A DNA stretch of 64,000 nt. Source: Phallusia mammillata. Taxonomy: Eukaryota. Positions 39,701-61,600 of this stretch are shown one piece after another (position 1 is the stretch's first letter; each line of letters opens with the position of its first letter). Under the pieces are notes generated by a model. It saw only the letters and a list, made by a program, of their open reading frames with translations, was not told the origin of the DNA and searched no databases. Where the stretch lies: contig OZ281496.1 in NCBI GenBank assembly GCA_965637545.1, positions 24,862,001 to 24,926,000 of the forward strand. Reading direction: 5' to 3'. The position numbers and the translations under genes were made by a program.

Positions 39701-42700
39701 CTTTTCTTTCACAATGCTTACATTGCAGATGTAGTTCCCGTTTGTAGATAAGTCAAAACTTGGTCAGTTGTCGAAAGAATGTCGTGTATCGTTTTGATGG
39801 TGATCTAAAACCGATTTTACGGTGTGTTTGATGGTCTAACATTATTAAAGTTTAACTTTTTTCAACTGCTTGCAAAAGAAAATATTATGATAGCAATTCG
39901 TTTTTTTGTAGCCTATACATAAGTAATAATCGAAGAGGTAGATCGTCGTAGCGTTGCTTGAATTAATAATTTGATAATGTTTTGGAATCCAGCCACAAAG
40001 AACAATGCTGTATACCTGTACTGTTATGGGATTGGCAGCAGTCAGTTGCTTTAAGATCGCTGTGACGTTTTGAATACTTAAAGCGGTTAGATTTGACGGG
40101 ATTCCTGTTAGGACTTTAAGAGATGCAGCTATTGCTGTGACACTCGACGTGGTAAGATGTGACACGTTGACCTGTAAAAAACATTTGCTTTGTTCATGTT
40201 AATTATTCATGTTAATTTTAAGTTAGAAATGCTACATGAGTACAGCACTTTTTCGTCAAAATGAATTGTTAATAATTGGTGCAGTTCATTTTCCTCTTCA
40301 ACAGGATTTTTAAACGTGAGGTGTATGCCCCACTGGGTGACGGTGGCAAATGAACGTGGCCTAAAAGATCTAGATCCGAAGTTTTGTCAAAATTTACTTT
40401 TGTTCGTTATACCAAGGAAATGGTCTTCGAAGAAAGTTTTAAATGAAAATATTGGCGTCTCAACCTTTACGTAAACAACTTAAACAAGGTAGACTTTTCC
40501 TATTATAACATGTATGTTCAACGACAAGGGCATTTAAAATTTATCAAAAAGAGCTTAAGTAAAAAATGGAAGCCGTATACATGAAAATGATAGGCCATTT
40601 TCAATGTTTTTGAAATCTAGGATATTCGTTGACAGGCTTTAGATGTCTTCTGACACCAACATTGTTTACCTGGCTTGCAAGACTTGTTAATGTTGATCCG
40701 CAGTTGATTACAAATACCTTCCCGAAGTATGCCGTAGTTATGCTTGTGGTATTTAGGACACACGTCACTGATGCCTCTGGTATTCCTAGATTTAATTCAC
40801 ATGTGACGCGAGCATAATATCCCGTCTGATTATATTTTTCGAATGTTAAACCATTCCCAGGTTGGCAAAAACATTGCCATTGGCCTTAAACATGTTTTAT
40901 ATGATTATGCCGTTACCTGTCAAGGAACATTTCTGTTGTGAAACCGCAGTCAAACCAACTGCTGTTTTTCCGAAAGTATAGCTTTTGTTTGAAGCGATAA
41001 TCACTGACTGCTGACAAAAGACTGCAAAATAAAAGCGGTTGTGTTAACGACAATATCAAAACTAACATCTGTACATGCTGAGATTTTTAGTAAATTGGTA
41101 GCCTGACGGGAATTGGTAGCGACGAAATATTAACTAAAATAGTCAGTGGCAACTCATGACAAATGGCACATCATTGTAAAACTTAACTTAGCCTGTATGG
41201 TTGGAGGTTTTTGATCGAAACCGGTATTAGGGACATATTGTTTACTTATCAAAGATCGCGCTAAAAAAGAGTTATAGTAACAGAGGAAAATGGTAAGATT
41301 GATTGGCACTACCACTGCAACGAAGGCAAGGATGGTAAAGCTATAATTGCTTACCGGAAAATGTCGGCAGTTTGACTGGAATCGCCAATGATTGAGTGGT
41401 TCCTGAAAAACACATAACAAAGGATGTAGGTATTGGGTCACCGAAAAGTCTCATGTCCTAAAAAGATGCGCGATAAATACAAATTCTCCGCTATTAAAAC
41501 TTCAAAATCTCGTTTTTTATATATTTATAATCTATCTACGATATACAGATGTTTACCTGCTGAGATGGATAAGTTTGCGACAATAGGTAGTGACAGGTTA
41601 GAGCCTGTAAAAGCCCATAGTTATCAACGATTCTCTTATAACATTTGCTCAAAACATCCTTTTAAAACATAGATTTGCGCTAACTGTTGTGTGTTTACGC
41701 GCTGGAAACCGTTAACATTAGCCTCAGCAAGCCCAAAGCATACCAAGTAAAATTGGTCATTTACTCGGTTTTTAAGAACTACTAACACTGGTGGTTGGTT
41801 TATGCTATTTCTTAACTCGTTCCACCTAAGTCCACCCTGTCGTGTTCATTCATCCAACCATAGCCTTAGTTACATAACGATTTGTAAAAACGTTGTACTC
41901 CTAGTCAGCGCAATGATGTTTTACCAATTGTGCCTTCACTATTCGACGCTTTGCACAAAGAATATCCTTCAGTTCGGCTTGTCCTAGTGCAATTGTGTCA
42001 CTGTTTTTTTTCCACCAAGAGAAATGAGCTCCGCTTAAAAATCAAAGTGGCTATGATGCTATATCCAACACTGAACGTAACGTACCTGATATTGCCGGAA
42101 GTTTAACTGGACTCGGCAGGGAAAGGTTGTTTCCTGAAACACGATCACATAAATCAACAATCGTGCTTAAAAAGACGCGAGTTTTTAGCTTTCACTTCGT
42201 GCAACGAAGAACTATATGAAACAGAAACCACAATACGCTATAAATGTTTGCCAGATGTTGTGACTGATTGGTTCAAAACTATCACATGACAAGGAAAGTG
42301 GGAAATAGGAAACCGTCATATGAAAGCAATTTGTTAAAGGTGACTGGTTGAAGCAGTGGTTCGCAACCTTTATCGACGAATTCCTTCCTTGACAATTCAA
42401 AACATTGTAGCGCCCCTTGTCGCCTATGTTACTTACAAAGCTAGCGTTTCCGATTATCTTTTGTACGCGTTTTAAAGTAAATTCTTTCCCTGGTGTTTTC
42501 AAATTCCTTCGCGGTTGGGAACAACTGGGTTAAAGGATAAATGCGCGATAGCGTTTAGATAAACACTGTTGGGAGGAGTGTGTAAGTTTTTTGGGGTTTA
42601 ATGAAACATCACACCCCTGTTCTTGCGCCATCGATCACCTACTGGTTCCCTGGGGGCTATTTATAATTCCAAATTGTGTTTACCTGCTGAGGTGGATAAG

Positions 42701-43075
42701 TTTAGAACCGTCGGTAGCGACAGATTGGTTCCTGTAAGTACACAGTTATGAAGTTTACTGTAAAAATATTCTACTAGGCAGCAATACGACTGAAACGGAC
42801 ATTGTTGTAAGTGTAGTCTCCTTACCTGGTAGGGATAAAGGATTGAGTAAATTTGCTTGCAATTAAATAGAATCTGAACAATAAAACATAAGTTCGACTA
42901 TTCTACCTTTATAACATGAACCCACTTTTAGTTATTGTTGTATTTAGATAAATTGTATCGTTTTGTACTCTGTACTTAATTCGTGCCAAAACGATTAAAG
43001 ATGTTAAACCAAAAATGACTTACCTGCTGTGTGAACAACAAACGCAACAATTAAAATCCCACTGTACAGCATCAT
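36757..43075 (-). CDS. Adhesion GPCR 'C', about 19 exons, about 720 aa, no lectin domains: SP, short linkers, HormR-like, GAIN/GPS, 7TM with short C-tail; possibly impaired
   Basis: Exons: 43075-43024 (MMLYSGILIVAFVVHTA), 42855-42826, 42731-42684, 41604-41557, 41402-41355, 41021-40917, 40785-40670, 40171-40016, 39804-39722, 39669-39552, 39296-39078, 38919-38800, GPS 38666-38508(?), 7TM 38469-38360, 38067-37860, 37701-37587, 37524-37364, 37284-37117, 36858-36757. The GPS exon lacks the donor used by the paralogs. Confidence 0.8.
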
Positions 43076-43658
43076 TAGTTTCCTTCTTTGTAATTTTTTT
43101 CTAAGACATGGGCAAAAATAAATTTCCTTAAATTTACGTGGTCTTTTCTTAGTTTGAAACTTGCTTATGGTTAACTAAAAACCCAAATAATATAAACTAT
43201 ACATGATTAACCTGTTTCAACCAACTCAACACAAGTTTTTGGTAAATGGCAAATAATCCAATTCAACGACCCCACTATATTGTTTACACTTTCAATTGGT
43301 TTACCACCATAACAGCAACCAACGCTGGTTTACCACCATAATCGCCACTAACATAGAAAAAGAACCACCACTGGTTATTCACAGTAAAAGTATTTGTAAG
43401 TCCACCTACATCACAGCGGAACGGTGGTTTGGAAGTGAATGAATATCCGCGGATAACGCAGTTTGTTCGGGATGTCCAGGTTTTGAGTGATGTTGTCAAC
43501 GTTGGGGTAAACATGCTCTTTATCCCACTTTTATTGCATCAGATCCTTGTCCGCCTTGTTCACTACGTTGAATGTTTAAATATATTTTTACAATCTTCTT
43601 AAATAATGGTTTGCTTTACTGGTAACGCTGGAATTGCAAACAGCTTATGACGCTAACT

Positions 43659-43867
43659 CAGTGGTTCTCAACCTTTCGTGGCCCACTTTCATTGCACAAA
43701 AATTCTGTTGCCCAGTAATTTTTTATGAAAGAAGCAAAACAACTAAAAAATATTCTTGTAAAATTGAGTGTAGTGACACAAATAAAAATTCGTAAAAAAA
43801 GCTTTTCTGTTGATTGGTCTGTGGCCCAATCAAAATGCTTCCATGGCCCACTGGTTGAGAACCGCTG
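43659..43867. mobile_element. hAT MITE, 209 bp, between C and D
   Basis: TIR CAGTGGTTCTCAACC / GGTTGAGAACCGCTG; perfect 8-bp TSD CGCTAACT. Confidence 0.92.
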
Positions 43868-44379
43868 CGCTAACTGCAAAGACCTTAGTAGGATTGGCTC
43901 GTATTTCGAATTGTGTGCAAATTTCATCTCATTTCTAAGTCCCAGCTGGTGACATTTTTAATGCGGTTGGAATTAATTTACATTTTGTGCAGCAAGGACT
44001 TGTTTTGTGATAAATTTTTGTTTAAATTCTCATTAGAACGTTGTCATGCTTTTTGGATACTATAAGTTAGCTTCGATATTGGGCAATATGTCATGTTTTT
44101 GTCACTATATTCTCTGTATTGTATTTCTTAAAAGTGATCGATACTGCGTACAAAATGAAAAAAATCCACAAGGGCACAACTTCCATGCTTCTGTCTATAA
44201 AGTCAGTTTATAAAAGCATAGAAAGTTCGATAAAGTCAAGGAAGACATTACTCTTCGTCGAAACAGCAGACTTCATTTACATTCTTCAAGCAAATACATT
44301 TTTACATTGATATTCAGAAAAATGTTTGTGTCCAGATTTTTTTCAATGTTTTCTATTCAACCACTGGACTTCTACGGAA

Positions 44380-47300
44380 TTAGGTGCGAGTTGATACAAC
44401 AGAACTCCTTGGTCCTCTGTTATGTTCTTTTTTTCGGCACATGATGCAAGCTACAAAAGCTTCCCACCACAACACGCGGATCTTAGTCTGGCGCAGACAG
44501 TTCAGGACGAAAATTAGGAATCCCTGAAACACACAGAACCGAGCAAGTTTAGTCAATGAAAATAGTATTGTACAATTGTACGCGGTAGAAAAACTTACCT
44601 GTATGGAATTGAAAATGGTGAACAGCCAGCTCATTATAGTTTGGTATGTTACGTTGTCAGCAAGTAACATAAAGAACCCAAAGACCCACGTGAGGCCCAT
44701 CATGATGCAAACAGCTACTGCCACTGCAAAGTCGTCTTTGGGGTTGCGTTTTCGGGCTGACGACGATACCTACAAAAAACAGTCAGCTCAATAATATTGC
44801 ACAACAGGCACACTATCAACTCGCCAAAGTCCCCAAAGACCAAGCAGTTTTATTTTATTGTCTGTGTTGCATTGCCACGTAATCTGCCATTTCGTTGAAC
44901 ATTGCACCAACCTTAGTTCTCAGACAAGTTATCTTGCATATTACTATCACAAAGCAAGTGATGTTGCATATTGCTAAGATTCCAACTGGCAAAAGAAAGC
45001 CGTAATTGAGCGAATATTGGTCCAGCCAGCACATATTCCTTGCTTTGTAGACTGATGTAAAGAAAATGTCGTCTGAAAAAAAACGAGAATTTATAGAAAA
45101 AAAGAAGTTACATAATTGTGTTCCAAAACTTATAATAAAAAAATGACAAACGATGCTTGTTTAAAATGTACCTGGAAAGTAGTTGTGTTTATCAAATACC
45201 GCCGAAATTATGCTGTCAATAGCTACAATCACTATTGGACCAACATAACAGATAACTGCTGGGATAGTAGATGATGTACCACCAATGTAAGCCATCTAAA
45301 ACACATTTTGCTAAAATAAACCTCCCATTGTTTACCATACTTTTTCTATGTATCTAGTTCTGTGTGTATAGTTATATTGTCATATTAATAGCCCTTTGGA
45401 CTGACCTGGAATGATTTCAAAGAAATATTTGCAACTCCTTTTATTTGCAACTCCTTTTAAAATATGTGCGCGCAAAAGCGTCTATACCAGTGGTTCTCAA
45501 CCAGTGGGCCATGGTCCACTGGTGGGCCATGGAAGCATTTTAATTGGGCCACAGACCAATCAAATAGAAAGCTTTTTTTAAGAATTAACTTTCATTTGTG
45601 TCACTACACTCAATTTTACAAGAATAATGGCTTGGGGAGGAATTGAGAAGGAATGTTTTTGTTTTGTTTTTTGTTCTGAACCTATTTTATAGTTGTTTTC
45701 TTTCTATCTTAAAAATTTACTAGGCCACAGAATTTTTTTTGCAATAAAAGTGGGCCACGAAAGAAAAAAGGTTGAGAACCACTCGTCTATACTATTACCG
45801 TAGTCAGAGCTTTGTACATGTTGTACGCGTTGGCGCTCATCCAAAACCAAGTGGTAAGCAAAAAGTAATGGAGAAGACCCGTGACAATGTAACATCCAAT
45901 CGTATTTGAAGTCCAACCAACACCAAACAGGAAGATAATATCAGCTATCAGAAGGTTGAAACAGATGTTCAACAGAAACACTGTTGGTTGTCGCTGACGT
46001 AGTTCCCTGCAAAATTTGTTGTTGTGACAATCTTCCGTAAAGTAAACTGCTTGTGCCAGGGGCGTATCCAGAAATTTTTAAAGGGGGGGGGGTCCAACAA
46101 ATTTTTTTGGGGAAATCCCCAATGACGTCACACGTCGTTCAAAACGACGCGTTATGCGGCAAAGCACTTTTTCCAAAATTTCTCTACCCATCTAATTGAC
46201 AGGAAGAACAGGTAATTTTAGCGAAAGCTTTGTAGTTTTCTGATTTCGCCGCTGCTATCTAGCTTACTCAGCCAAACTGCAGCTGCAAAATAAGCGTGAC
46301 TGTCAGGTAATCAAAATCGTTGCTTAAAAAAACAGGGTCCAATTTCTAAAGAACTAAATCTCTTGCTGAAGCGGTAATCCTACTGTTAAGTTGCGCAATG
46401 TCACGAATGCACCAAAGGTGGTAACTGCAGAAGGCATAAATTGTGCCTGGCAAGTAACAAATTACCCTAATAACATAACTCGATTTCCAACGATCTAATG
46501 TTTTTGACAAACTATTACGTGTTTGGCGGATCAAAGCAACACAACATTACACGTTTTTAACACTTTTACATTGTTCAAATGCAAAAACAGTTTGAATATG
46601 TTGCACTTTAGCAAGAAACTGCTACCAGCGTCCTAGCCGGAACGTAACTTTCCGATTGTTAGCGCATAAACCTCCTTATTAAACCCTTGTTACGTCACAA
46701 TTGGCGATTAAATAACAAGCGAATACAAGACATTGAAGGCTCGCGTCTTTGAGATAACGACTCCCTGTTATCACGTAGTGGTAAGCGGAACGTTTTTGGC
46801 CTATTTAATTTACGCACGACTTTTTGAAAATGGGGGGTCCGACCCCCAAACCCCCCCCCCCCCCCTTGGATACGCCAAGCCTTGTGCAATATTTTTTTCA
46901 CCGGAAGTAACATTCGTTTGTAGTCAATGGTTTAATTGAACTATGTCAGGGCTTTTCTTCCTGTTAACCACCGTATTTAAGGCAGCATATTGTTTAGGAC
47001 GTTTCTGCCAAAATCTCAGAAGACCAAATTGTAAACCGCCCACCTAATGTTGCGAAACCCCCAGAGTTTGATGTGTTAGAAATGTTTCTTACTTAATGCC
47101 CATGTATATTCCAATGGTGGCCGTCAATCCGAGCACCGATAATGCACAACCGATGTAACTCACAACTCCCATTGCGAAAGCGCTCGGAAGGATCTTTGTG
47201 CTCTTAAGATAATGTAATCGGTTCAGTTTTGTCGTACAACGTCAAACGACAAAAAAACCTACCACTATCATAGAAAAACTTGCCAATACTGCACATGCAC

Positions 47301-50300
47301 ATTTTGGTGGAGAACTTCCAGCAACCAATCTACAGCCGTTCGGAATCCATTTTCCGCTGGCTTGGTAAACGCTACACTGTGTCCTGGTTACGACGTCCTG
47401 TTGATTTACCCAGAAACACTTCGTTTTGTGGCAATGTAGATTCAAAGTTAATTTTGATGTTTGCTCCAAACATTTTGTTGAATTATGACACTTTAATTAC
47501 ATAGTAGTGATTTACCTTCAACGATCCGTTTGTTAATGCGACATTTCCTTGCTTTTCGCTTGTGTTCGTGAAAGTTAAGTCAATTGGTGCTTTGATTGCT
47601 CCGCCTTTGTGGCCTTTCACATTCACAGTGATTACCTAAAACGCAATTTAAATGTTTAATGATATTAACCAAATCACTTTCCAAATGTAGTTTATTGTAT
47701 AACTGTTAGTTGATCTTTCCTCCAGTTCATGATGAACACTGTTAAATGGGTTTGATGCGTTATGAACTATAGGCCTATTATACATGGATCTTAGATGCTG
47801 TCTTACCATGGGTGCTTTTTCAGCTGCAGGAAAGAGTGTTGAGCTTGAATGAAAGATAAAACTCGCTCGGACGCTTGTGTTGCCGCCTGTTGAGCCCACG
47901 GCGTCCAATACCGACCCAGGAATAGTTGCAGTAACCACATTTGTTCCTGCTATTGCGCTGTTGTTTCCAGGGGCGAATGAAACCGAAGCATACTTGTTTT
48001 GTGCAGTCTTCTTGGTTTGGCTCACCTAACAATTAATCGCATGTATATTTTGCGACACTTCGGCCATTATAAACATTTCAGCTTCAGGTTTTCATGCACC
48101 AATTGGTAAAAATATGTGTGTGTGTTCTCAAGTGTTGGTCGTAGCAATCTTGTTGTACCTGTATTGTTGTTTGGTTTGTTGATATTGTTAGGACAGTAGT
48201 GTTTGCAGGGAGCGTTACTCGGTTGGTGAATGTCTCCAAGCTTTTCGTAAGAGAAGCTTTTTGACTTGCAGCGGTCCTGAAAAAACGCATATCATGAAGG
48301 GAAATTCTGTACAACGAACCTTCAAACTTTATTGTTTTACTTACTTGCTGTTAGTGGTATTTTGGAATGTAGCCGCAACCTGGTTGGTGGTTAAAAGAAC
48401 GTCGTACATCGTGTTAACGGTAATCTTTAAAGAAAAGTAAGCATGGTTTTCTTCACGTTCTCATTTACGGCTACACCAAAATGTTTCACAACGAGCTTTC
48501 GCAAGATTTTGTCCAACCTGAACTTTTTGAGGATCCGTGGCACTTAGCTCATTGAGAGCAGCCGTGGCGTTAGCAACATCTGCCTTATTGAGTTTTGCTG
48601 GACTGCTTGTCAGCAGTTTCAGCGTTGCAACTGCCGTGGTTACACTTGACGTTGTAGCTTGTGACACATTGATCTGCAACAAGCACAACTTACGGTGACT
48701 TTAATGTCGGGTATAAATTGATTTGTAATTTTAGTTTTCATTGGATAAGGAAAGATTATAAACTTATTTTAGCACTGACGCTTGCAAATGTCGTTTTAAA
48801 TGTAGACACTTCAAAGCAACGTACACACACTAAACCAAACGCAGAACATGCAACCCATGATCATGATTAGAATACACCATAATTAGAAACGTTCAGACGG
48901 GATTGGAAAAAGAAGTTTATGCTGACGCAAGCATTCTGATATGAAATGGACCCCAACAGTGTATAAAGGATAAACATGGGCACTTTGTATCCTTAGTGGC
49001 AAGTTCATTTACCGTTGTTGACAAGCTTCCTAATGTTGTTCCGCAGCTGATTACAATCGGTGTGCCGAAGTACCCAGAGTTTGCATCTGTTGCGTTTTGT
49101 AAACAGGGTGCTGATGCCTCAGGATTTCCTGTATATTTGCAAGTTGTTATGTAAGTTTCAACACTGTGTTGTACTAAAGTATTTTTAGGGATATAACACC
49201 CACTTTAACAATTCTTTGCAACACTACTTGTTTGGTAAGTTTGTCACTCACCTGTTGAAGAACATGTTTGTAGTGAAACTGCAGTTTGTCCAACCTCAGC
49301 TTGAGCGAAATTGAAGGTTTTGTTCGACGCCGATACAACTTTTGACTTGCAAAACACTGTAATACGTATGTATGGTTTTTGATAATTGCTTGCAAGTAAC
49401 ATATGAAATTTCAATAGGTTTATTCCCAAAACGACAGCAGCAACTGTTTTTGTGCACTACTAGTAAGGCCTATAATGTATGAGCCTCCATCACGGTTTAC
49501 AATACCGAAACGAGGCCTTTGCTGAAGACTGATTAACGCATCCTAATTTTCTAATTACAAAACTGAAACACACTGTTCGACATTCTACATTGGTAGGGAT
49601 TAATTAATTAGTCACTGTATTTTTTACCTGCGGGTGCTGTAGCTATTGGTGTGCTTGCAACAGTTGTCGGTAAGGCTGTAGAAGCTAAAACAAACAATTG
49701 TAATAGAATCTGTTGCTAATGACACATTGACGTTTCCTAACGGTATTGGAAAGCTTGAATAATCTACGTTTAAGAATTCTGTGTGGGTATATATGAGTAT
49801 GAGTATATTTGAATTAAGATTCAATCGCACAATATCGTGCAATGATAAAACGTGATAATTTTGAACATAGATTTGTCTAAAGCTTTGGACTATTAAAAAG
49901 CTTATCTGTGTTGTTCTTACCTGCTGCTGTAGTTGTTGGTGACGCTGTAGTAACTAAACACAAACAACGCTTTAATTGTGTTACGTACAAACTTAGATAT
50001 GCATGTATTGGTCAAAACGTTTTCGTCACATTTAGAAAATGTTAAGTTCGCTTTCTATTTTACCTACCGTTAACTACTTGATAGAAAAGGCTTAGTTGAT
50101 TGCTCCAGCCTGAATTTGTGTCCGTCCTTGTTATAATCGCTACAAACTTTGTGTCACAAATGCTTGTAACTGTTGAAGTAAAGCTTTGGTTCGCGTTGCC
50201 GGTGACCACAATCATAACATTAGCAGTTGTATTGATAGGTGAGCTGAATACAACCTCAACAGTTTTATTCTGTAATGCGCTTGCAGCGACTGTGACCGTT

Positions 50301-52973
50301 CCTGACAGCAAAGCTAGAACGAACAAAACATTATTAGGCAATTGTGTGGGGTACAAAGCTACTTAAATAATATAGTGATCTGAATTCTGCGCCTTGTTAA
50401 GAAAAAAATGGTTATGTTAGATTGGTAACTGGAAGTTTCTGTTTGCTATGCTGTTGAACGTGCGTTTTTATTTGTATTTAAGGTAGTTTGATACAAACAC
50501 GTACAGTGGAAAAGTCCTGTTGCTAATGACTATTGACATTTCCTATTCCTATTGTAACGTATTTTTAGTATACTTTTCGATAATTTGCGTAAGTACCTAG
50601 CACGGGCAATAGCTAAGATTTAATTAGCTGTGGGTAATAATTAGTTGTTGGTAACGATCTGGTAACTAAACCCATACAAAACAAATAGTTATGCACTGTA
50701 TTTTGGCATAGGTCAAATACATAGGAGTGGCAAAACGATAGAAAACATTGCGGGTGCAAACTTACATAAGCGTTTAATGGTCTAACTCAGTCGTCCCCAA
50801 CCTGGGGTTCGCGGATCCCTAAGGGGTCCGTGAGATGGTCTCAGGGTGTCCGTGGAGGCAAGCATTTGTAGTAGCATTAACAACATTACAATATTTTTTA
50901 AATTCCCAAACCGTTTTTACAAACCTGAACATGTGCAAACCGTTTTTACAAACCTGCACGAGTGCAAACTGTTTATCAAACCCTTGGATCAGAAAAACTT
51001 GTGATTATTGCCTCCATTGCGAAACCACAACACACATTAACAATAGAACTTATTGTGCTTTGTTTCGTTCGGGGTTCGCGGAACTATAAAATTTATAAAG
51101 GGGGCCGTGGCTACAAAAAGGTTGGGAACCACTAGTCTAACTAAACGTTTCAGTTAAATTTAGAATTTGTCATTACCGTAGTAAATAATTACAACTTTAA
51201 CAATATCGAAACAAAGCTTTTACTTGAGGCACGTTAACGCATCCTAAATTTGTAATTGAATTTTATATATTTGTTATCAACCACCGCCTTTCTTACCTGC
51301 TGCAGTTGTAGCTTTGCGGGGGCTTGTTACTTTTGTCGGTGATGCTGTAGTAGCTAAAACTAACAATGTCAATAAATGAGACATGTATTTCTGTCGTTTA
51401 GGAAAGTTAGAATCCAATAGAGAAGATATTTGATTTTGATTACTCTTACTTTTATGTACTTATATTTTGCAAACGCTACGTTATGATGTGGACTTCATGT
51501 TTTGGAATGTGCTGTCGTCTTACTTTTAATGTACTGAAAATGCTCGGTCAATGGAATACTCGTACCAACTTACGAGAAATTGGACTCCAGTTGAGCACTT
51601 CATTTGTAATTGAAAAATGGTATAGCACCTTTCTACTATCAAGTAGGTGAGGTTTTTTGTCAATCACTGTCTTTCTTACCTGCTGCTGTAGTAGCTATTG
51701 GGGTGCTCGCTACTGTTGTCGGTGATGCTGTAGTAGCTAAAATAAACAATGTCAATAAATTAGACATGTATTGTTTAGTCGTTTAGAAAAGTTAAAATAA
51801 AGAGATTAGAATTTGTTTACTTCCACTTTTAATACTTATATCTTGAAAACGCTACGTTATAATAGAGACTCCATGTTTTAGAATGTGCTGTCGTCATACT
51901 TTTTAATGCACTGAAAATGCTCTGTCGGTGGAATACTGTGGTACCAACTTACGGTAAATTGAACTCCAGTTGAGCACTACATTTGTATTTGAAAAATAGT
52001 AACACACCTTTCTACTATCAAGTAGGTGTGGATTTTTGTCAATCACTCTCTTTCTTACCTGCTGCTGTAGTAGCTTTGGGGGTGCTTGCTACTGTTGTCG
52101 GTGATGCTGTAGTTGCTAAAAAAAACAATGTCAATAAATGAGACATCTATTTCTGTCGTTTAGGAAAGTTAAAATAAATCCAATAAAAAAGATTTTAACT
52201 TGTTTACTTTCAATTTCATTTACTTATATCTTGAAAACGCTACGTTGCAATAAAGACGTCATGTTTTGTAATGTGCTGTCGTCTTACTTTTTATTATATT
52301 GAAAATGCTCTGTCAATGGAATACTGGTACCAACTTACCGTAAATTGGACTCCAGTTAAGCACTACACTACTAGGGGTGTCCACCTGTGTGTCAGTTCTT
52401 TTGATTGTGGCTTTAAATCCCCAGCTGTAGATTTTCGTCATGGTAAATGAAAAACTAAAGTTGGACTGCACCGTAAATGTCCCTTGAATATCGATTGGCG
52501 TTGGGACAGAGCAGTTGTAAAATGTGATGGCCACATTTTTGCTCGTTGCTGCCGGCTGAGCCCCAGAGTAAACGATATAACTTGACGGTTGACCTGTAAA
52601 TAAACAACAAATGACAAACCATACAGTTGTGTTTTCAAGAATTTAGTTTAATATGTATTAATACACATTTTCAATAAGTTTGCTATGGTGATCGTACGAG
52701 TTTTTTACCTCGTATGCTTACAATATCAACAGGAAGCTATACGCCAATAGCAAAGCGGATGGCTTCACTCATTTTAGGCCGGCTTTGAAATGCGTTCTTT
52801 GCGCTGCTCGTAGCAGCGACAGTCAGTTCACTCACGCGTTTGGATTTATCACTTTTTAAGGCAAAGATATTTGCATCAAGCATCACACACAAATTAAACA
52901 TACATCAATTGGTTGATATACCTGATGCAACGACTGCAAACATTGTAACTTCAAGTAGTATTATGAGCACCAT
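44380..52973 (-). CDS. Adhesion GPCR 'D', 22 exons, about 926 aa: SP, X, 3 Thr linkers, X, 2 linkers, HormR-like, GAIN/GPS, 7TM (B-like head, E-like core)
   Basis: Exons: 52973-52922 (MVLIILLEVTMFAVVAS), X 52593-52339, 52115-52059, 51736-51680, 51353-51297, X 50313-50068, 49953-49921, 49684-49628, 49356-49252, 49128-49013, 48673-48518, 48424-48345, 48276-48159, 48025-47807, 47635-47516, GPS 47397-47263, 7TM 47202-47093, 46006-45799, 45295-45172, 45072-44912, 44769-44599, 44523-44380. Confidence 0.92.
45488..45784. mobile_element. hAT MITE, 297 bp, same family as 43659-43867 in opposite orientation, in an intron of D
   Basis: TIR CAGTGGTTCTCAACC; perfect 8-bp TSD GTCTATAC; paralog E has a single GTCTATAC at 56895-56902 (empty site). 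Confidence 0.93.
46057..46880. mobile_element. Non-autonomous TIR element, about 824 bp, in an intron of D and absent from E
   Basis: Left end CAGGGGCGTATCCAG, degenerate right end TTGGATACGCCAAGC, G and C runs subterminally; CTTGTGC duplicated on both sides; E intron (about 57155-57175) is contiguous across the site. Confidence 0.8.
50788..51134. mobile_element. hAT MITE, 347 bp, in an intron of D
   Basis: Ends CAGTCGTCCCCAACC / GGTTGGGAACCACTA; perfect 8-bp TSD GTCTAACT. Confidence 0.88.
51297..52339 (-). repeat. Three tandem units of about 380 bp, each with a 57-nt Thr-rich linker exon; two also carry an orphan 3' fragment of the X exon
   Basis: Linker exons end at 52059, 51680 and 51297 (period 379/383); fragments GTGCTCAACTGGAGT.CAATTT..C|gtaag near 51575-51600 and 51950-51980. 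Confidence 0.88.
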
Positions 52974-53982
52974 CGCCTTGTTTGTTTGTTTTCTCTTGCA
53001 GCAAGTCGCTGTAACAGTTTACATGAAGCTTAAACTGCAAAGGAAGTTCGTTACTTTAAACAAAACTGGTTAATCATAACGTTTATCCTAGAACAGGTAT
53101 TATCATCAGGTATGATATGAACTGCTGCCGCTCTTTTTCAAGTTGCTTTCTCTCAACAAACGCGGCTTCCAAACTTTTGTAGTAACGGCTCTAGTTCATT
53201 ATTGTGTCTGCAAAACACCACGTTTTAACTGGAACTTTTTATGCACAAAGTTGTGTCGTTCGTCGAAACAATGCGGGAGAAAGAATTAGAAACAACTAAC
53301 ATCCAAAATTAATTAGTGATTTCTACGTGTATGTTTTAAATGCTTTAGGGAACATAAACATGCTTTTAAAGACACTTTAAGACTATCTTACGGACTCCTC
53401 ATGGGTTTGCGAACTCTAGTTTGGGCATACTGCTGTCTACGCGTATCGCATCACAGATAACTAAACCAAAATAAAACAATATCAACTACATCCCTTTCAT
53501 GAACTGAAAAAAACTAACCCGTCTACTGTTATGGCTACTCGTAACAAGAGCTGTGTTGTTAACCAGTTAATCAGAAACTGGTATGAATAAACGCCCTAAC
53601 CCAAGCTTTATCGTAGGCAAGTTGAACATCCGTGTTGCCCATACGACGACGTATCCACAGTGGAAGTAGGTGTTTTTCTGTGCGTCATGTTAAGCGGAAC
53701 AAAAACACGCGAACTTATGCATAACTAAAAACTAAATTCTTAAACGGTTATCGATTATTAGATGTTCAAGCACAGTAGTTATTACTACTTGTAAGTAACA
53801 CACTGCAAAAAAGCCATTTTTAAAGTTGTTCACTTTGTGTATTATTGCACTCATACTGTGTATTAGAATTGGAAGCCTTCTTATTCTGTGTCCTTAATTG
53901 TTTTAAAAATCAATTACCGAGCTGAGTAGATGTTGCTCGACTTAACCTTAATGTCCAAGACCTAAAACGTCTCGTTTTAGAC

Positions 53983-54567
53983 CAGGGGTGGGGAACCTGC
54001 GGCCTAAAGGCCGCATGCGGCCTTTTAGGGTACTGAGTGCGGCCTTTGATGTCAAAATACATTTTAGGATGTTGATATTACAGAACGCACCAGGCACTGA
54101 AAAATAGACATAAACGTTTTTTTACCTTTATTCCACAATACTATTTGATTAGTTCTAGAGCAATGGTTTTCAAACTAGAGCCAAATGTTCCCGTAGTGGT
54201 ACACAGAGCGAATACCGTAGGACTTTCAAAAGTCCAAGGTTTAACAATCTTACTTTGCAAAAGAACAATTGTTTGCACATAATCGAATGTCTTAAACTCG
54301 TCTGTGATGTCATGAGGTGCTCTTAGATCATTGAATTTGTAGACAAGTGAGTTTCTTGGTTAAAAAATCTTAAATGTTGTAGTAAAGACGGAAATGTAGT
54401 GAGGCATTTTATTTAGCTTGGACCGTAAGTCGTACAACTCTACAAGGGAATAGCAAAACGACCATTCTGTAAGTCAAAAGAACGCCTGGAAAATAGTCTA
54501 TGCGGCCTAAACGAATGTCGATGAACCGTTTAGTAGCCTTTATAAACAAACAGGTTTCCCACCCCTG
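53983..54567. mobile_element. hAT MITE, 585 bp, between D and E
   Basis: TIR CAGGGGTGGG(G)AACC / GGTTTCCCACCCCTG; perfect 8-bp TSD TTTTAGAC. Confidence 0.9.
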
Positions 54568-55074
54568 TTTTAGACAATGTCTATTGTGTATGTCTTCTTT
54601 ATAAAATGCCTGTCAATCGAACTTTTGGGCATAAACGGTCTTCTTCGGGCTGATACTTTCGGGTTTCGGTCGGGTTCGGATTTCGGGCCCGTTTACTGTT
54701 ACTATTTTCATTCTTCCAGTTATTTTGACAAAGGCTTCCTAACCGGATTTCCACCTTGTTTAGCAATGAAGAAATCAACCTTTCTTTGAAGAAAAATCTG
54801 CAAAATTCCAAGTGCCAAATAATTACACTTGCGTCATTACTCTTATGACGACTCAGACAAGTCTTTATTTATTTTTTTGCAGTATAGTTTATTTACAAAA
54901 CTCCCTGTGCAAATCACCCGATCAATCATCGAATTAACGCCTTTGCAATTCTAATAATAATTTTATTTAAATTTAGCTTGGTTTCAAACTTAACTATTTC
55001 CTGACTTCCTATTCCATATTTACGACACATTTAGAACTGATTTTGAGTCATTTCTGCTCTTGTTTAAACATTTG

Positions 55075-55165
55075 TTTCTCTCTGCATGTCATCAGACCAC
55101 CAAGTTTCCCCACGATAAAGTTTGGATTTTGGTTTGTAGTAAACAGTATGAAGCAAATATTAAAT
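55075..55165 (-). pseudogene. Orphan degenerate copy of receptor C's last coding exon
   Basis: Reads FASYCLLQTKIQTLSWGNLVV* versus C FALYCLLQTKIRTLWWGNLVACVTCRDNE*; 1-nt deletion, stop, no splice acceptor; downstream flank resembles 36590-36720. Confidence 0.85.
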
Positions 55166-55651
55166 TCTTCTTAATAATGTTTCGCTTACTGGTAAGGCTG
55201 GAATTACACACAGTCTCTAAAGCTATCTGCAACCACTTTGGCGGCTTTGGCTCGTATTTCAAATTGGATGCAAAATTCATCTTATTCCTCTCAGCTGGTC
55301 GCATTTTTACGTTTTGCGTGGCAAGGATTTGTTTTGTGATTAATGCATGTTTGAATTTCTGTTTGATTGTTGTCATGTTTTTAGATACTCGAGGTTTGCT
55401 GTTTACCGTATGTCAACTTCTGTCACTGTAGCCTATTCCCGCAATGTTATTCACATAGTACTAGATGTTGAAAGTCTGTGAGCGGTTTAATGCGTTTTTA
55501 GAATGTACTACTCGTGGCGAAAAACACATGGAAACAAATTTGTTTATCCGTGGTTCTGTTTTAATAGAATCAAACAGGGCAAAATTCTTCGACACAGCGG
55601 TACAGATTTTTTCAATGTTTTTTATTCAACCTTGTCAATTCTTTTATGGAA

Positions 55652-58600
55652 TTAGATGCGAGTTGAAACTGATCCTGAAGAACTCCTTGGTCCTCGTTTG
55701 TGTTGTTCCTTTCGGCACGTGATGCAAGCTACAAAAGCTCCCCACCACAAAACACGGATCTTAGTTTGTCGTAGGCAGTTTAGGACAAAAATGAGGAATC
55801 CCTGGGACACACAAAAACGAACAACTTTAATCAATGAAAAAAGTATTGTATAATTGTACGCCATGGGAAAAACTTACCTGCGTGGAATTGAAAATTGTGA
55901 ACAGCCAGCTCATTATAGTTTGGTATGTTACGTTGTCAGCAAGTAACATAAAGAATCCAAAGACCCAAGTGAGGCCCATCATGATGCAAACAGCAACTGC
56001 CACCGCAAAGTCGTCTTTGGGGTTGCGTTTTCGGGCTGACGAGGATACCTGCAAAATTTTAAAATGTAAAGTTACAAAACGTGTAAGATAAAGTTTATCT
56101 CGACGTCATACACTTTAGTAGGGTGCTTTAAAGTACTTTGGAAGCATTTACAGCGCTACCGATTTGCTTACAAGTATTACGACTGGCAAATGTCAAGTTG
56201 CAGAAATCCCAAGCACCCACTAGTTATGTTTTTGCTTTACCGACTGTAGTACGTAGTCAGACATAGCCTTCGGAACCTAGTCTTCCATTTTGTTGAACGG
56301 GAGAGCCATGATTTGAAATTATTAGGTTTGTTTTTTTTGCTACCAACCTTAGTTCTTAGACAAGTTATCTTGCATATTACTATCACAAAGCAAGCGATAT
56401 TGCACATTGCCAAGATTCCAACTGGCAACAGAAACCCGTAATTAAGCGAATATTCGTTTAACCAGCACATATTCCTCGCTTTGTAGACCGATGTAAAGAA
56501 AATGTCATCTGAAAAAATATGGAAGGAAATAAGTTTTCCAAACAATTTTCAAACTGATAAAACAGTCGATGTTTAAACTCGCGTTCAAAATTCACAATCG
56601 TAGACGATTGAAAAAAAAACGATAACTGTGTCGAAATGTACCTGGAAAGTAGTTGTTTTTATCAAATACCGCCGAAATTGTGCTGTCGATGGCTATAATC
56701 ACTATTGGACCAACATAACAAATGACTGCTGGTATGGTTGATGATGTGCCACCGATGTAAGCCATCTAAAACAGCGTTTGCTTAATTAAATTTTCGATAT
56801 TCGATTTTTAAACATCATTTTCCAACATGTCTAGTTTAGCGTGTATACTTCTATTGTCATATTGATAGCCCTTTGTAATGACTTGGAATATAGTGTCTAT
56901 ACTATTACCGTAGTCAGAGCTTTGTACATGTTGTAAGCGTTGGCGCTCATCCAAAACCAAGTGGTGAGCAAAAAGTAATGGAGAAGACCCGTGACAATGT
57001 AACATCCGATCGTATTTGAAGTCCATCCAACACCAAACAGGAAGATAATATCAGCTATCAGAAGGTTGAAACAGATGTTCAACAGGAACACTGTTGGTTG
57101 TCGTCGACGTAGTTCCCTGCAAAATGTGTTGTTTATGACATTTGTCCGTAAAGTAAACTTCTGGTGCAATATATTTTCTCATCAACAGTAACTTTAAATC
57201 CGTCTATAGTCTACGGTCGGCTTTTACTCTATCAGGGCTCTTCATCCTGTGTACCTCTTTGTTTTGCACAGCTTTTTAATAAGAATGTTTTGCAAACGAA
57301 CAAAATCGAATTCTCGTTTTGCGAAACGCCCACCTAACGTTACAGCATCCCGTTTACTCTCATTTATTTAGCACAGTTTGTAATAAGTATTGTTTTGCCA
57401 ACGAACGGCTCAAGTGCAAACCGCCCGCTTGTATTGCAAAACCACCACAGTGGCCATTACCACCCGTTAAAAACCTTTACTTACTTGATGCCCATGTATA
57501 TTCCAATGGTGGCTATCAAGCCGAGCACCGATAATGCACAACCGATGTAACTAACAACTCCCATTGCGAAAGCGCTCGGAAGAATCTTTGTGCTCTTAAA
57601 GATAACATATCGGCTAAATTTTGTCGTACAACATACATCTATGATAGAAAATATAGAACCTACCACTATCATAGAGAAACTTGCCAAAACTGCACATGCA
57701 CATTTCGGTGGAGAACTTCCAGCAATCAATCTACAGCCGTTCGGAATCCATTTTCCGCTGGCTTGGTAGACGCTACACTGTGTCCTGGTTACAACGTCCT
57801 GTTGATTTACCCACAAATCGCTTCGTATTAATTTGTTGCAATGTAGACCTAAATTAATGTATCCGAAATGTATAATAGTATTTTCCTGTCCAGCACAGAC
57901 ATTTTGAGTCAATATTAATTCGGAAACGCAGAACAACAATGTTTTCTATGTGTTGGGTTTGTTCGAAATCGTTTGTAGAAAGTCATGGCACTGGTAGTAC
58001 ACCTTAGTGATTTACCTTTAACGATCCGTTTGTTAATGGAACATTTCCTTGTTTTTCGCTTGTGTTCGTAAAAGTTAAGTCAATTGGTGCTTTGATTGCT
58101 CCGCCTTTGTGGCCTTTCACATTTACAGTGATTACCTGAAACGCGACTCAAAGGTTCAATCAAATAGTAATGTTATCCAATTTTGTAATGGTTAGTTGAT
58201 CTTTTCTCTAGTTGATGATGGACAATTTAAGTCTAATTGATTTGATGCTTTATAAACTATAGGCCTACATATATGGATGTTTGGATGTTGTCTTACCATG
58301 GGTGCTTTCTCAGCTGCAGGAAAAAGTGTTGAGCTTGAATGAAAGATAAAACTCGCTCGGACGCTTGTGTTACCGCCTGTTGAGCCCACGGCGTCCAATA
58401 CCGACCCAGGAATAGTTGCTGTTACCACATTTGTTCCCGTTATTGCGCTGTTGTTTCCAGGGGCAAATGAAACTGGAGCATACTTGTTTTGTGCAGTCTT
58501 CTTAGTTTGGCTCACCTAACAAATAATCACGTGCATATATTGCGACACTTTATAGACTCGTGGGCTTAAGGTTTTCCTACAGCAATTTGATAAAAAAGCC

Positions 58601-61600
58601 GTGTGTGTTTGTGTGTCTTTAAAATCTGGTTGTAGTATTCTTTTTGTACCTGTATTGTTGTTTGGTTTGTTGATATTGTTAGGACAGTTGTGTTTGCAGG
58701 CAACGTTACTCGGTTAGTGAATGTCTCCAAGCTTTTGGTAAGAGAAGCTTTTTGACTTGCAGCGGTCCTAAATAAAATACAACTCGTAAAGGAAAAATTC
58801 TACTTTAAATCTATAAACTTCCATTTTTACTTACTTGCTGTTAGTGGTATTTTGGAATGTAGCAGCAACCTGGTTGGTGGTTAAAAGAACGTCGTACATC
58901 GTGTTAACGGTAATCTTTAAAGAAAAGTATCGAAAGTATAGTTTTTACAGCTGCAAAGAAAATTTTCGTTTTACAAGATGTCTAACCTGTACTTTCTGAG
59001 GATCCGTGACACTTAGCTCATTGAGAGCAGCTGTGGCATTTGCAACATCTGCCATATTGAGTTTTGCTGGACTGCTTGTCAGCAGTTTCAGAGTTGCTAC
59101 GGTGGTGGTTACACTTGATGTTGTAGCTTGTGACACATTGATCTGCATTGAACATCACTTTTATTAACTTTACTGCAAGTCAAAATTATTAATGTGTGAT
59201 TTCAATTTTCATTGGATAAGGAAATTGATCATAAAGTTTGTCAGAAAACGAATTTATTCTAGTACTGACGGTCGCAAGTGACGGTTTTAAATACAGACAT
59301 TTCAAAACAACGCACGCACGTAATCCAAACACAGAACTTACAACGCATTTTGTAATGAGAATATAGATGAACTTTGTTATGGACTTTCGACGTTCAGACG
59401 GGATTGAGAATAAAACTGTAAACTGGCGCAAATAGTTGAAAATGATATGGACCCCAACAATGTATAAGGATATGCACTTTGTATCTTTAGTGCAAGTGCA
59501 TTTACCGTTGTTGACAAGCTTCCTAATGTTGTTCCGCAGCTGATTATAATCGGTGTGCCGAAGTACGCAAAGTTTGCATCTGTTGCGTTTTGTAAACAGG
59601 GTACTGATGCCTCAGGATTTCCTGTATAAATGCAGGTTATAAAACATTCAATAGTGCGTTGTACTTTTTGTAATTAAATAAAGAACTTTTGGCGTACATA
59701 TAGTACCGTATGCGTTTGCAACCAGTGTTGTTTCTTATTTTGTCACTTACCTGTTGAAGAACATGTTTCTTGTGAAACTGCGGTTTTTCCCACCTCGACT
59801 TGAGCGAAATTGAAGGTTTTGTTGGACGCAGAAACAACTTTTGCGTTGCAAAACACTGCAACACACATGCATGCTTTTGATTAGTGCACATCACAAGTAG
59901 TAGTAACACTCATAATATGGAGTATTATGTATTAGCCATCATCATAGTAAGAAACAAGTGTTTACCCTTTATAACAGTTGGTGTGTTAGGTTTGGGACTT
60001 GTTTTTGACAGGGCTGTCGTCGTTGCTAAGGGGGTCGTCGTCGCCAGGGGTTTCGTCGTTGCTAAGGGGGTTGTCGTCACCAGCGGTGTTGTCGTTACTA
60101 AGGGTGTCGTCGTAGCTAAGGGGTTGGTGGTCACCAGGGGTGTCGTCGTTGCTAAGGGTGTCGTCGTGGCTAAGGGCGTAGTTGTTGCCAGGGGGGTGGT
60201 TGTAGCAGGCGGGTAGTCTGTTATTGTATGCTTGTTTTATGTTTTACCTGATTTAAACACTAGCAGTCTATTCATGTCACTTACAAAGTTGGGCTGTGTA
60301 TTGGATCGAAAGCTGATTGGGAAATGTTGCTTTTTTGTCTAGCCTGTTTATCGTGGTCTTGAAACCCCATGCTTCAGCCAGTGTAGCGGTAGCGATAAAC
60401 TTGTATCCAACAGCAGTCGCCGTGACTGTGATCGATAGAGGGGCGGGGTTTTGGCATACTTCAAATGGGATCGATGCATTCACTTGTGGCTTTGTCCGGT
60501 TTCCATATAATACCGTGTAGGTTCCGCTTAAGGTTGCTGAAAACGACACGATTAGCAATTAATAACAATACAAGACAAGTTTGTTTGTAAAACTAATCCA
60601 ACAACCACAAGGAATACAATTTGGTTTGGCTTTTGTACGTCTTGTTAAAAGTATGCAAAACAAAAAAAATCTGCATTCTTCATCGAACAACGGTATCATT
60701 TCTTCATCGAACCACGGTAAACGCTAAATAGGAAGTTTACTTTACATGACGCATGGCACATCGCTGAAGGATGGGGATTTTTCATGTTGAGTGTTAATTA
60801 GTTGTACGTGGGGGTGGCGCGTTTCCGTAGTTTTGTGTTTGCTGCTCAAATTATTTTTTGCAAACCTTTTTAATGCATGGGTCAGCTTTTGTGTATAATT
60901 ATACACTATAGTATAAATTACTCTCACTATAGTTTTGTAATGTTAAAATCGCCACATGATATGAAATATTTATTAAATGAAAAACCCAAATTAACGTTTT
61001 ATGGTCTTGTTACATTTGCATGAAAGTGGACTAAGAGACTATTATGTCTGTACATAACGCAAGTGTTCCCCAATACTATCCTAAGTTAGGTCGCAAAAAC
61101 ATGTTTATGTATGCAAAACAGTTTAAGCTGCGTAATAAAGTTTTTTTTTTTCAAAACTGACCCAGCATTGAATTGTCTTGATATTGTTTAGTTTCTTCAA
61201 AAACACTGTAGCAAATCTATGGTCTACATGCTACTGTTGGTATAGTGTTTGGTATAATTTAACAACGTGGTCCATCAAAACTCCAGAATCGTTTTTATTT
61301 AAACTTACTTGGCCTCCTTCTCTGACACAAACTGGGCTTTAATTGTTGGCAATCCCTTGCTGCCCATGACGAATATTTTCCCACAGCAACGCAGTCAGGT
61401 TTTGCTTTGTTGTTGTTTGTAATCTGACCGCCCGCAAAATTTTTTTCGCTTTCCAGCAACGGCGTGCCATCAATCCAAGTAAAGTTTGTTGCAGTGCCGC
61501 CTTTGTCCTGCAAGCCAATCCACGTTGGCACTGCATAAAATCAACTTAAGTTATAACTATTTGAAACCCAATTTAAGATGGACCGTTTTGGCCGAAATGT

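What the first reader, a model, noticed from the sequence alone, without database searches (positions are those of the whole stretch)
44380..55165. Receptor D is a chimera: B's lectin head and promoter on an E-like signalling core
Seen: D vs B proximal X domain 79/82 aa identical, with homologous signal peptide, introns and upstream DNA (33.9-36.9 kb vs 50.0-55.2 kb). D vs B TM6-7 exon is only 34/57 identical, whereas D vs E is 56/57, and D/E introns and 3' flanks align (43.9-49.4 kb vs 55.2-59.9 kb). The switch falls in the intron at about 49390-49620. Inference: recent ectodomain swap by unequal recombination, rewiring ligand specificity and expression onto a different 7TM.
Basis: partly seen in the sequence, partly recalled or inferred. 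Interest (0 to 1): 0.85.

Follow-up and report, generated by a model that had tools for sequence, protein, structure and literature searches.

The report
Chimeric adhesion GPCR from duplication junction
In a sea-squirt cluster of five tandem adhesion receptor genes, gene D is a genuine, intact hybrid whose outer lectin-like part comes from gene B and whose signalling part comes from gene E. It is old rather than recent, and it resembles the known human EMR2 chimera.

Summary
D (44380-52973, minus strand) reads as an intact 922-aa ORF over 22 exons, and all 21 introns are GT-AG.

- **Head:** the signal peptide, X1, mucin cassette, X2, their introns and about 880 bp of upstream DNA match B (176/199 aa).
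- **Core:** the GAIN+7TM core, its introns and 3' flank match E (620/654 aa, against 46% to B).
- **Switch:** it lies between 50057 and 49389. The 660 bp between hold two mucin mini-exons of internal origin.
- **Age:** every duplicated block has the same age (dS 0.20 and 0.23; non-coding K2P 0.27-0.45).
- **Fossil:** a dead C-type last exon sits at 54888-55160, exactly where the E/D flank homology ends.

Best reading: one roughly 14-kb tandem duplication (E core - C - B head) created D at its junction, and the extra C copy was then deleted. Because all head exons are phase 1-1, the fusion was in frame. Purifying selection has acted since (omega 0.11 core, 0.28 head).

"Recent" is wrong. "Lectin" means only an H-type-lectin-like fold, because D has no C-type lectin. 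No transcript evidence was found. Earlier notes from this scan, on this window only, had flagged the fossil. This is a new member of a known kind (EMR2-type chimera).

The parts
44380..52973 (-). Gene D, ATG to stop: 22 exons, 922-aa intact ORF, all 21 introns GT-AG
   Evidence: Exon model built from paralogue-conserved blocks and splice phases
52922..52973 (-). D signal-peptide exon (MVLIILLEVTMFAVVAS-), phase-1 donor. B counterpart is 35421-35472
52339..52593 (-). D X1 exon (H-lectin-like domain, subfamily I), 71/84 aa identical to B X1 (34834-35088)
51270..52367 (-). Three tandem ~380-bp cassettes, each with an intact 57-nt phase 1-1 mucin mini-exon (Ma 52059-52115, Mb 51680-51736, Mc 51297-51353). 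B has one (34542-34598)
50068..50301 (-). D X2 ('proximal X') exon, 74/77 aa and 97.4% nt identical to B X2 (33948-34181). The AF2 model has an H-type-lectin-like fold
49390..50057 (-). Switch region, like neither B nor E. It holds mucin mini-exons Md (49921-49953) and Me (49628-49684). 49496-49698 is a copy of the Mc cassette (51197-51367)
44380..49389 (-). E-type part of D: 33 nt of intron plus exons c1-c13 (GPR128_N-like, GAIN, GPS, 7TM, tail). 620/654 aa identical to E (55652-59855), with homologous introns
43588..44379 (-). D 3' flank, homologous to the E 3' flank (55160-55651) and interrupted by a repeat insertion at 43660-43851
52974..53850 (-). D upstream DNA homologous to B upstream DNA (35473-36300), about 70% identity, with a ~60-nt island of ~93% identity at about 53650-53710 (B 36110-36170)
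54888..55160 (-). Fossil: the last 23 codons of a C-type terminal exon (frameshift and stop, no acceptor) plus C-type 3' flank. It matches 36573-36849
55160..55651 (-). E 3' flank. Its homology to the D 3' flank ends at 55160, exactly where the fossil starts, which marks the deletion junction of the lost C copy

Best explanation
D is a real chimeric adhesion GPCR gene that selection has maintained. It was born at the junction of one tandem duplication inside the array.

The ancestral order, in the direction of transcription, was E - C - B - A. A single unequal exchange or replication template switch joined a point just after B's X2 exon to a point just before E's first core exon (c1). That duplicated about 14 kb (E core + 3' flank, C, C-B spacer, B promoter region and head) and gave E - C' - [B head | E core] - C - B - A. 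The extra C' copy was then deleted over about 6.7 kb, or skipped in the same complex event. All that remains is its last 23 codons and 3' flank, between E and D.

Every ectodomain exon in these genes is phase 1-1, so the join was automatically in frame. Two mucin mini-exons copied from D's own cassette now fill the junction.

The product would present B-type H-lectin-like X1/X2 domains, probably under B-type upstream control DNA, on an E-type GAIN/7TM module.

Shown: mosaic ancestry, equal ages, the fossil, the intact ORF and purifying selection. Inferred: the order of events, transcription, ligand binding and signalling.
For: - **Mosaic identity:** the D-B head is 176/199 aa identical, while the D-B core is 46% and the D-E core 620/654. 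c12 is 56/57 against 34/57.
- **Trees:** in the core tree D+E has 98/99 support and A+B 99/99. Forcing D+B together is rejected (p-AU 4e-5). In the X-domain tree D_X1+B_X1 has 99/98 and D_X2+B_X2 99/97 support, and E's X is distant.
- **Non-coding homology:** introns and flanks are homologous in the same pattern as the exons.
- **Equal ages:** dS is 0.203 [0.13-0.30] for the head and 0.227 [0.18-0.28] for the core. K2P is 0.31 for head introns, 0.35 for core introns, 0.38 for B/D upstream DNA, 0.31 for C 3' end against the fossil, and 0.27-0.45 for the D/E 3' flank.
- **Fossil:** it matches C's last exon best, and the E-flank/D-flank homology ends exactly at its edge (55160 <-> 43588).
- **Collinearity:** D core + flank + C follows the order expected of the ancestral E core + flank + C.
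- **Phases:** all head exons are phase 1-1.
- **Intactness and selection:** 922-aa ORF with 21 GT-AG introns. Omega is 0.11 in the core and 0.28 in the head. D and E core branches are equal (0.028 and 0.027), and 12 against 7 polarised changes is not significant.
- **Assembly:** a 992-nt unitig with 0 mismatches spans 49103-50094 at single-copy depth in two DNA samples.
Against: - No transcript evidence. None of the RNA-type runs offered held D exons, and no database protein matches B, D or E closely.
- The junction is not a clean two-part join. 660 bp of other origin lies between the B-like and E-like parts, so at least one further rearrangement is needed.
- The deletion of C' is a second, assumed event.
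- Equal divergence is compatible with two events close in time, not only with a single event.
- The two DNA runs come from one study and may not be independent of the assembly.
- No outgroup species was available to polarise which architecture is ancestral.
Confidence: 0.7

Rival explanations
1. Two-step origin. E first duplicated in tandem, giving an E-like gene D0 with a CTL-X head. Later an ectopic exchange or gene conversion overwrote D0's head and upstream DNA with a copy of the segment running from the 3' end of C through the B head.
For: The end state is the same: E-like core and 3' flank, B-like head, and a C-type fossil as the far edge of the imported segment.
Against: It predicts no particular relation between the age of the D/E split and the age of the B/D split, yet all blocks have overlapping divergence. 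No relic of a CTL or E-type X exon is left near D. It also needs an import whose left edge falls inside another gene's last exon.
Confidence: 0.15
2. EMR2-style concerted evolution. D began as a full B-type duplicate (from a C-B tandem duplication), and its core and 3' flank were later converted by the neighbouring gene E.
For: This is the mechanism proposed for the known chimera EMR2 (PMC10055975). D and E are adjacent, and their exons are 85-99% identical.
Against: The tract would have to cover 5.8 kb, including every intron and about 0.8 kb of 3' flank. D/E introns are as diverged as B/D introns, so there is no recent or ongoing homogenisation. No B-type core remnant is present.
Confidence: 0.06
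3. D is not one working gene. Either the head and the core are separate or untranscribed relics, or the join is an assembly artefact.
For: No RNA support was found. D/E exons are similar enough for cross-mapping. A contig joint that skips 49557-49913 was reported.
Against: An intact 2.77-kb ORF across 22 exons is not expected of a pseudogene after about 0.16 substitutions per site on its lineage, and omega is well below 1 in both parts. D differs from B and E by 5-30%, so it cannot be a collapse of their alleles. A 992-nt error-free unitig at single-copy depth bridges the switch in two samples. The joint rests on only 20 nt and matches the sister cassettes.
Confidence: 0.08

Closest known systems
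EMR2/ADGRE2, the human EGF-TM7 chimera of CD97/ADGRE5 and EMR3/ADGRE3
   Same: It is an adhesion GPCR whose ectodomain is nearly identical to one linked paralogue (EGF domains 97% to CD97) and whose 7TM is nearly identical to another (~90% to EMR3). It is read as duplication plus conversion that couples one ligand specificity to another signalling module (PMC10055975, citing Kwakkenbos et al. 2006).
   Different: In D, all parts, introns included, show equal and substantial divergence, so there is no sign of ongoing concerted evolution. A fossil of the co-duplicated neighbouring gene documents the mechanism. The head is made of H-lectin-like X domains, not EGF domains. The GPS lacks the His-Leu/Thr cleavage consensus. 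The organism is an ascidian.
Chimeric genes formed at tandem-duplication junctions, and exon shuffling through symmetric phase 1-1 exons (general knowledge, not retrieved here)
   Same: The 5' part of one gene, with its promoter, is fused to the 3' part of another at a duplication breakpoint inside introns. In-frame joining is guaranteed by matching intron phases.
   Different: Here both parents, the chimera and a relic of the intervening gene all survive side by side in one 30-kb stretch.
Lineage-specific 'unclassified' adhesion GPCRs of ascidians (Ciona: 24 of 30, PMC2396169) and Phallusia mammillata 'CD97 antigen-like' protein P0002
   Same: The architecture is the same: X domains, Ser/Thr-rich stalk, GPR128_N-like region, GAIN/GPS and 7tm_2. 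P0002 is 30-40% identical to the window genes.
   Different: No close orthologue of B, D or E is in the protein collections searched. The Ciona survey reported mostly GPS-only N-termini and no chimeras.

Membership tests
Adhesion GPCR (class B2) | Secretin-type 7TM domain (Pfam 7tm_2) | tested here: met
   Exon c9 of D hits PF00002 at E 7.5e-08, 32.4 bits against a cutoff of 20.6. The full model has 7 hydrophobic segments.
Adhesion GPCR (class B2) | GAIN domain with a GPS motif directly before TM1 | tested here: inconclusive
   PF01825 GPS scores 22.4 bits against a cutoff of 22.5 on exon c7. GPR128 GAIN subdomain A is weak (E 0.048). The position before TM1 and the Cys pattern fit.
Adhesion GPCR (class B2) | Autoproteolysis consensus His-Leu | Thr/Ser at the GPS | tested here: not met
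   D and E read ...CACAVL|ASFSMIV and B reads ...CTCYKL|ASF, with neither the His nor the Thr/Ser. They are probably uncleaved receptors. This is not required for membership.
EMR2-type paralogue chimera | Ectodomain closest to one linked paralogue, 7TM closest to another | tested here: met
   Head 88% to B and core 95% to E, against 46% to B. The trees agree, and the AU test rejects D+B for the core.
EMR2-type paralogue chimera | Identity maintained by continuing gene conversion (concerted evolution) | tested here: not met
   Introns and flanks of all blocks are equally diverged, K2P 0.27-0.45, and there are no near-identical tracts outside exons.
H-type lectin domain (Pfam PF09458) | Sequence match to the family model | tested here: not met
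   No Pfam hit on the X1 or X2 exons themselves. There is only an indirect link: X2 finds bacterial or phage proteins at E 4.5e-08 to 4e-04, and the matched stretch is their H_lectin domain.
H-type lectin domain (Pfam PF09458) | Six-stranded beta-sandwich fold like Helix pomatia agglutinin | tested here: inconclusive
   The AF2 model has pLDDT 93 and six strands. The Foldseek top hits are phage tailspike C-terminal domains, R-pyocin fibre, SLL-2 and Helix agglutinins at probability 0.93-1.0 and TM 0.55-0.71, but with E only 0.15-0.4.
H-type lectin domain (Pfam PF09458) | Sugar-binding residues and trimeric assembly | not tested
   No residue-level comparison or binding data.
C-type lectin head (as in genes A and E) | Pfam Lectin_C domain in the ectodomain | tested here: not met
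   Lectin_C is found in exons of A and E (E 1e-10 and 4e-10) but in none of B or D. No CTL-like block lies in 49.4-53.9 kb.

The most novel reading that the evidence does not exclude
The array works as a cassette-shuffling system. The genes are tandem, all ectodomain exons (H-lectin-like X, C-type lectin halves, mucin mini-exons) are phase 1-1, and mucin cassettes duplicate locally. Unequal exchanges would therefore repeatedly create new in-frame head/7TM combinations, some of which selection keeps. D would be a dated, fully documented instance of that process. Ascidian adhesion GPCR clusters would then be a diversifying glycan- or pattern-recognition repertoire rather than a static family.
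Probability: 0.2. Interest if true: 0.65.

Novelty: new member of a known kind. Interest (0 to 1): 0.45.

Why it matters
How adhesion GPCRs acquired their many ectodomain architectures is usually inferred only from domain catalogues. At this locus both parent genes, the hybrid, the relic of the co-duplicated neighbour and the matching intron phases are all still readable. The mechanism can therefore be reconstructed step by step and dated relative to the parents.

The locus also offers a natural domain-swap experiment. The same H-lectin-like head sits on two very different GAIN/7TM modules (B and D, 46% identical), and the same module carries two different heads (D and E). That could be used to separate ligand recognition from signalling in an orphan receptor family.

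It is not a new principle, because EMR2 is a well-known precedent. Function and expression remain untested.

Tried and rejected
- **RNA evidence.** Expression therefore stays open.
- **Database relatives.** The exhaustive search with X2 gave only 11 hits at 41% identity or less, about 30% for the Phallusia relatives. The word-based search with the core of P0002 found only P0002 itself. No orthologues from other species could be used to polarise the events.
- **AU test on the head.** Forcing D_X1 and E_X together is not rejected (p 0.20). The test is uninformative, because E's single X domain is a long branch that can attach anywhere. The head argument therefore rests on architecture, on 85-96% against about 30% identity, and on intron and flank homology.
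- **Gene conversion as the reason X2 is so conserved (97.4% nt).** Rejected. The adjoining intron is at ordinary divergence, and the difference from X1 lies in replacements (3 against 13), not in silent sites (3 against 6).
- **My first impression that B/D introns (70%) are older than D/E introns (79%).** Rejected. That came from BLAST pieces. Like-for-like alignments gave overlapping K2P intervals.
- **The hydrophobic stretch before X1 as a signal peptide.** Rejected. It is the translated polypyrimidine tract of the acceptor. The real signal-peptide exon lies 330 nt upstream.
- **The contig joint 49556->49914.** Not accepted as a deletion allele. Only 20 nt anchor one side, and those 20 nt are identical in the sister cassettes.
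Full report
**Context.** The window (38% G+C, no N) carries five adhesion GPCR genes in tandem on the minus strand.
- A: core 5.7-10.4 kb, with a giant head of C-type-lectin + X cassettes up to about 23.8 kb.
- B: 26517-35472.
- C: 36760 to about 43075.
- D: 44380-52973.
- E: 55652 to about 62122.

Self-BLAST and an all-against-all comparison of stop-to-stop translations define 13-14 conserved core exons in each gene. Pfam recognises 7tm_2, GPS (borderline) and weakly a GPR128-type GAIN subdomain A in D's exons. Lectin_C is found only in exons of A and E.

The nearest database proteins are Phallusia mammillata sequences at only 30-40% identity. The best is P0002, 'CD97 antigen-like', which has four X domains, a stalk, GAIN and 7TM. 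The genome is therefore an ascidian's.

**Gene models.** I built the models from paralogue conservation, GT-AG sites and phase continuity.
- D is an intact 922-aa ORF in 22 exons: signal peptide, X1, three mucin mini-exons, X2, two more mucin mini-exons and core exons c1-c13. All 21 introns are GT-AG.
- B is intact at 892 aa and has the same plan with one inter-X mucin exon.
- E's core is intact, and E uses the same splice sites as D.
- Every ectodomain exon in B, D and E starts in phase 1 and ends in phase 1.

- Head: over signal peptide + X1 + mucin + X2, D and B are 176/199 aa identical (X1 71/84, X2 74/77).
- Core: D and E are 620/654 aa identical, D and B only 296/638.
- Introns and flanks follow the same pattern. 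B's head introns and about 880 bp upstream of its ATG align to D's. D's core introns and 3' flank align to E's.
- In an ML tree of the cores, D+E (98/99) and A+B (99/99) are separate clades, and forcing D+B together is rejected (p-AU 4e-5).
- In a tree of X domains, D_X1 pairs with B_X1 (99/98) and D_X2 with B_X2 (99/97). E's only X domain is remote, and E's head has a different architecture: C-type lectin in two exons, one X and one long mucin exon.

**Breakpoints.**
- Collinear B~D homology stops 10-16 nt after the X2 donor, at about 50052-50057.
- D~E homology begins at 49389, 33 nt before the c1 acceptor at 49356.
- The 660 bp between them resemble neither B nor E at the corresponding place. 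They carry two phase 1-1 mucin mini-exons. One of these, with its downstream intron (49496-49698), is a copy of D's own cassette at 51197-51367.
- The join is therefore a three-part mosaic. No homology that could have guided a crossover is visible.

**The fossil and the flanks.** Between E and D, 54888-55160 aligns to 36573-36849, which is the end of gene C and its 3' flank. The fossil keeps the last 23 codons of a C-type terminal exon, closest to C among the five genes. It has no acceptor, and a frameshift leads to a stop. E's 3' flank is homologous to D's 3' flank, and that homology ends at 55160 <-> 43588, exactly at the edge of the fossil. Downstream of 43588 the D flank runs on into C's upstream region and C's signal-peptide exon at about 43075.

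**Dating.**
- Synonymous divergence is 0.203 [0.13-0.30] for B/D heads and 0.227 [0.18-0.28] for D/E cores.
- Like-for-like non-coding alignments give K2P 0.31 [0.26-0.37] for head introns and 0.35 [0.31-0.39] for core introns.
- They give 0.38 for the B/D upstream DNA, 0.31 [0.24-0.40] for C's 3' end against the fossil, and 0.27-0.45 for the D/E 3' flank.

All four duplicated blocks have the same age within error, and that age is far beyond polymorphism. The swap is not recent.

**Most likely history.** The ancestral order was E - C - B - A. One unequal exchange or template switch joined B just after X2 to E just before c1. This duplicated about 14 kb and produced E - C' - [B head | E core] - C - B - A. 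A deletion of about 6.7 kb, or a second switch in the same event, removed C' except for its tail.

This single scheme explains five things:
- the mosaic itself;
- the B-type upstream DNA of D;
- the C-type fossil;
- the exact end of the flank homology;
- the collinearity of D core - flank - C with the ancestral E core - flank - C, and the equal ages.

The matching intron phases explain why the product was in frame.

The alternatives are less parsimonious, and neither predicts equal ages. One is an E-like duplicate whose head was later overwritten. The other is a B-like duplicate whose core was converted by E, as proposed for EMR2. The conversion model is also contradicted by the fact that D/E introns are as diverged as everything else.

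**Is D alive?**
- Omega is 0.11 [0.07-0.16] for the core and 0.28 [0.17-0.45] for the head.
- The D and E core branches are equal (0.028 and 0.027). Polarised replacements are 12 on D against 7 on E, which is not significant.
- At about 0.16 substitutions per site on its own lineage, an unconstrained 2.77-kb ORF would be expected to have collected many stops. It has none (inference).
- D has therefore been under purifying selection for most of its existence.
- Direct expression evidence is lacking. No RNA run held D's exons, and the RNA-type contigs that did map cover only a high-copy repeat in two introns.

**Assembly.** In two DNA samples of one study, which share 0.83-0.85 of the region's 31-mers, a 992-nt unitig without mismatch covers 49103-50094 at the same depth as neighbouring single-copy pieces. 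That range runs from E-type exon c2 into B-type exon X2. The whole 6 kb laid is covered. D differs from B and E by 5-30%, so it cannot be a collapse of their alleles.

**What the head is.** X domains have no Pfam hit of their own. Even so, X2 finds bacterial and phage proteins through their H_lectin domains. An AlphaFold model built on 22 X-domain sequences (pLDDT 93) is a six-stranded sandwich. Its best Foldseek matches are phage tailspike C-terminal domains, R-pyocin fibre, the coral lectin SLL-2 and the Helix agglutinins, at probability 0.93-1.0 but E only 0.15-0.4. 'Lectin-like' is thus a statement about fold. Sugar binding is untested, and D has no C-type lectin.

**Upstream DNA.** The shared upstream DNA is about 70% identical. 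It contains one island of about 60 nt at roughly 93% identity, about 700 nt before the ATG. It also has a conserved ...TGTTACAG acceptor-like site just before the ATG. Together these suggest a shared first exon, or a trans-splice site, and a shared control element. This is inference only.

**Comparison with what is known.** The closest precedent is human EMR2/ADGRE2. Its EGF domains are 97% identical to CD97 and its 7TM is about 90% identical to EMR3, and it is interpreted as duplication plus conversion (PMC10055975). D shares the defining mosaic but not the concerted-evolution component, and it adds a preserved mechanistic trace. Ascidians are known to have many lineage-specific, unclassified adhesion GPCRs (PMC2396169). 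A full-text search found no paper linking H-type lectin domains with adhesion GPCRs.

**Verdict.** This is a new member of a known kind and a neat textbook case, not a new principle.

Noticed in passing
window 51270-52367: D carries three tandem ~380-bp cassettes (about 83% identical to one another). Each has an intact 57-nt phase 1-1 mucin mini-exon with AG/GT sites and a truncated copy of the 3' end of the X1 exon. B has one cassette. The stalk length of D may vary through splicing or copy number.
   Followed up: partly
window 45480-46840 and 43660-43851: A high-copy repeat lies in D's c8-c9 and c9-c10 introns (summed contig depth 10^4-10^5 against about 10^2 for its neighbours), and an inverted copy lies in D's 3' flank. 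It is absent from the matching E introns (1086 against 368 nt), so it was inserted after the duplication. It is the only part of the region present in the RNA-type runs.
   Followed up: partly
window 47263-47300 (D), 57664-57700 (E), 30175-30215 (B): The GPS region reads CACAVL|ASFSMIV in D and E and CTCYKL|ASF in B. The His at -2 and the Thr/Ser at +1 needed for GAIN autoproteolysis are missing, so these receptors are probably uncleaved.
   Followed up: no
window 53650-53710 and 36110-36170: A ~60-nt island of ~93% identity sits within B/D upstream DNA that is otherwise about 70% identical, roughly 700 nt before the ATG. It is a candidate shared promoter, first exon or enhancer.
   Followed up: no
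window 52339-52593 vs 50068-50301: After the fusion, X1 collected 13 replacements against B and X2 only 3 (nt differences 27 of 255 against 6 of 234 on whole-exon alignments, Fisher p 4e-4), while silent changes are similar. The ML tree puts all of these changes on D's branch and none on B's, although the outgroups are remote.
   Followed up: partly
window 49556-49914: Both DNA runs contain a contig that joins 49556 to 49914 (skipping 357 nt, which would remove mini-exon Me) at single-copy depth, but with only 20 nt on one side. It is probably a cross-mapped sister cassette. An allele lacking Me is not excluded.
   Followed up: partly
window 53850-54888: About 1 kb of D's upstream region has no counterpart in B (273 nt at the matching place) and no other copy in the window. 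It is probably an insertion.
   Followed up: no
window 41000-43100: Gene C's head has a signal-peptide exon at about 43075 and short exons with a repeated ...LSLP..V.L...G motif (41549-41608 resembles 42676-42735). It has no X, C-type lectin or Pfam domain, so it is a third head type in the array.
   Followed up: no
window 32766-32980 (B) and 10007-10230 (A): B and A have one fused exon where D, E and probably C have two (c3 + c3b). This intron loss or gain fits the A+B clade of the core tree.
   Followed up: no
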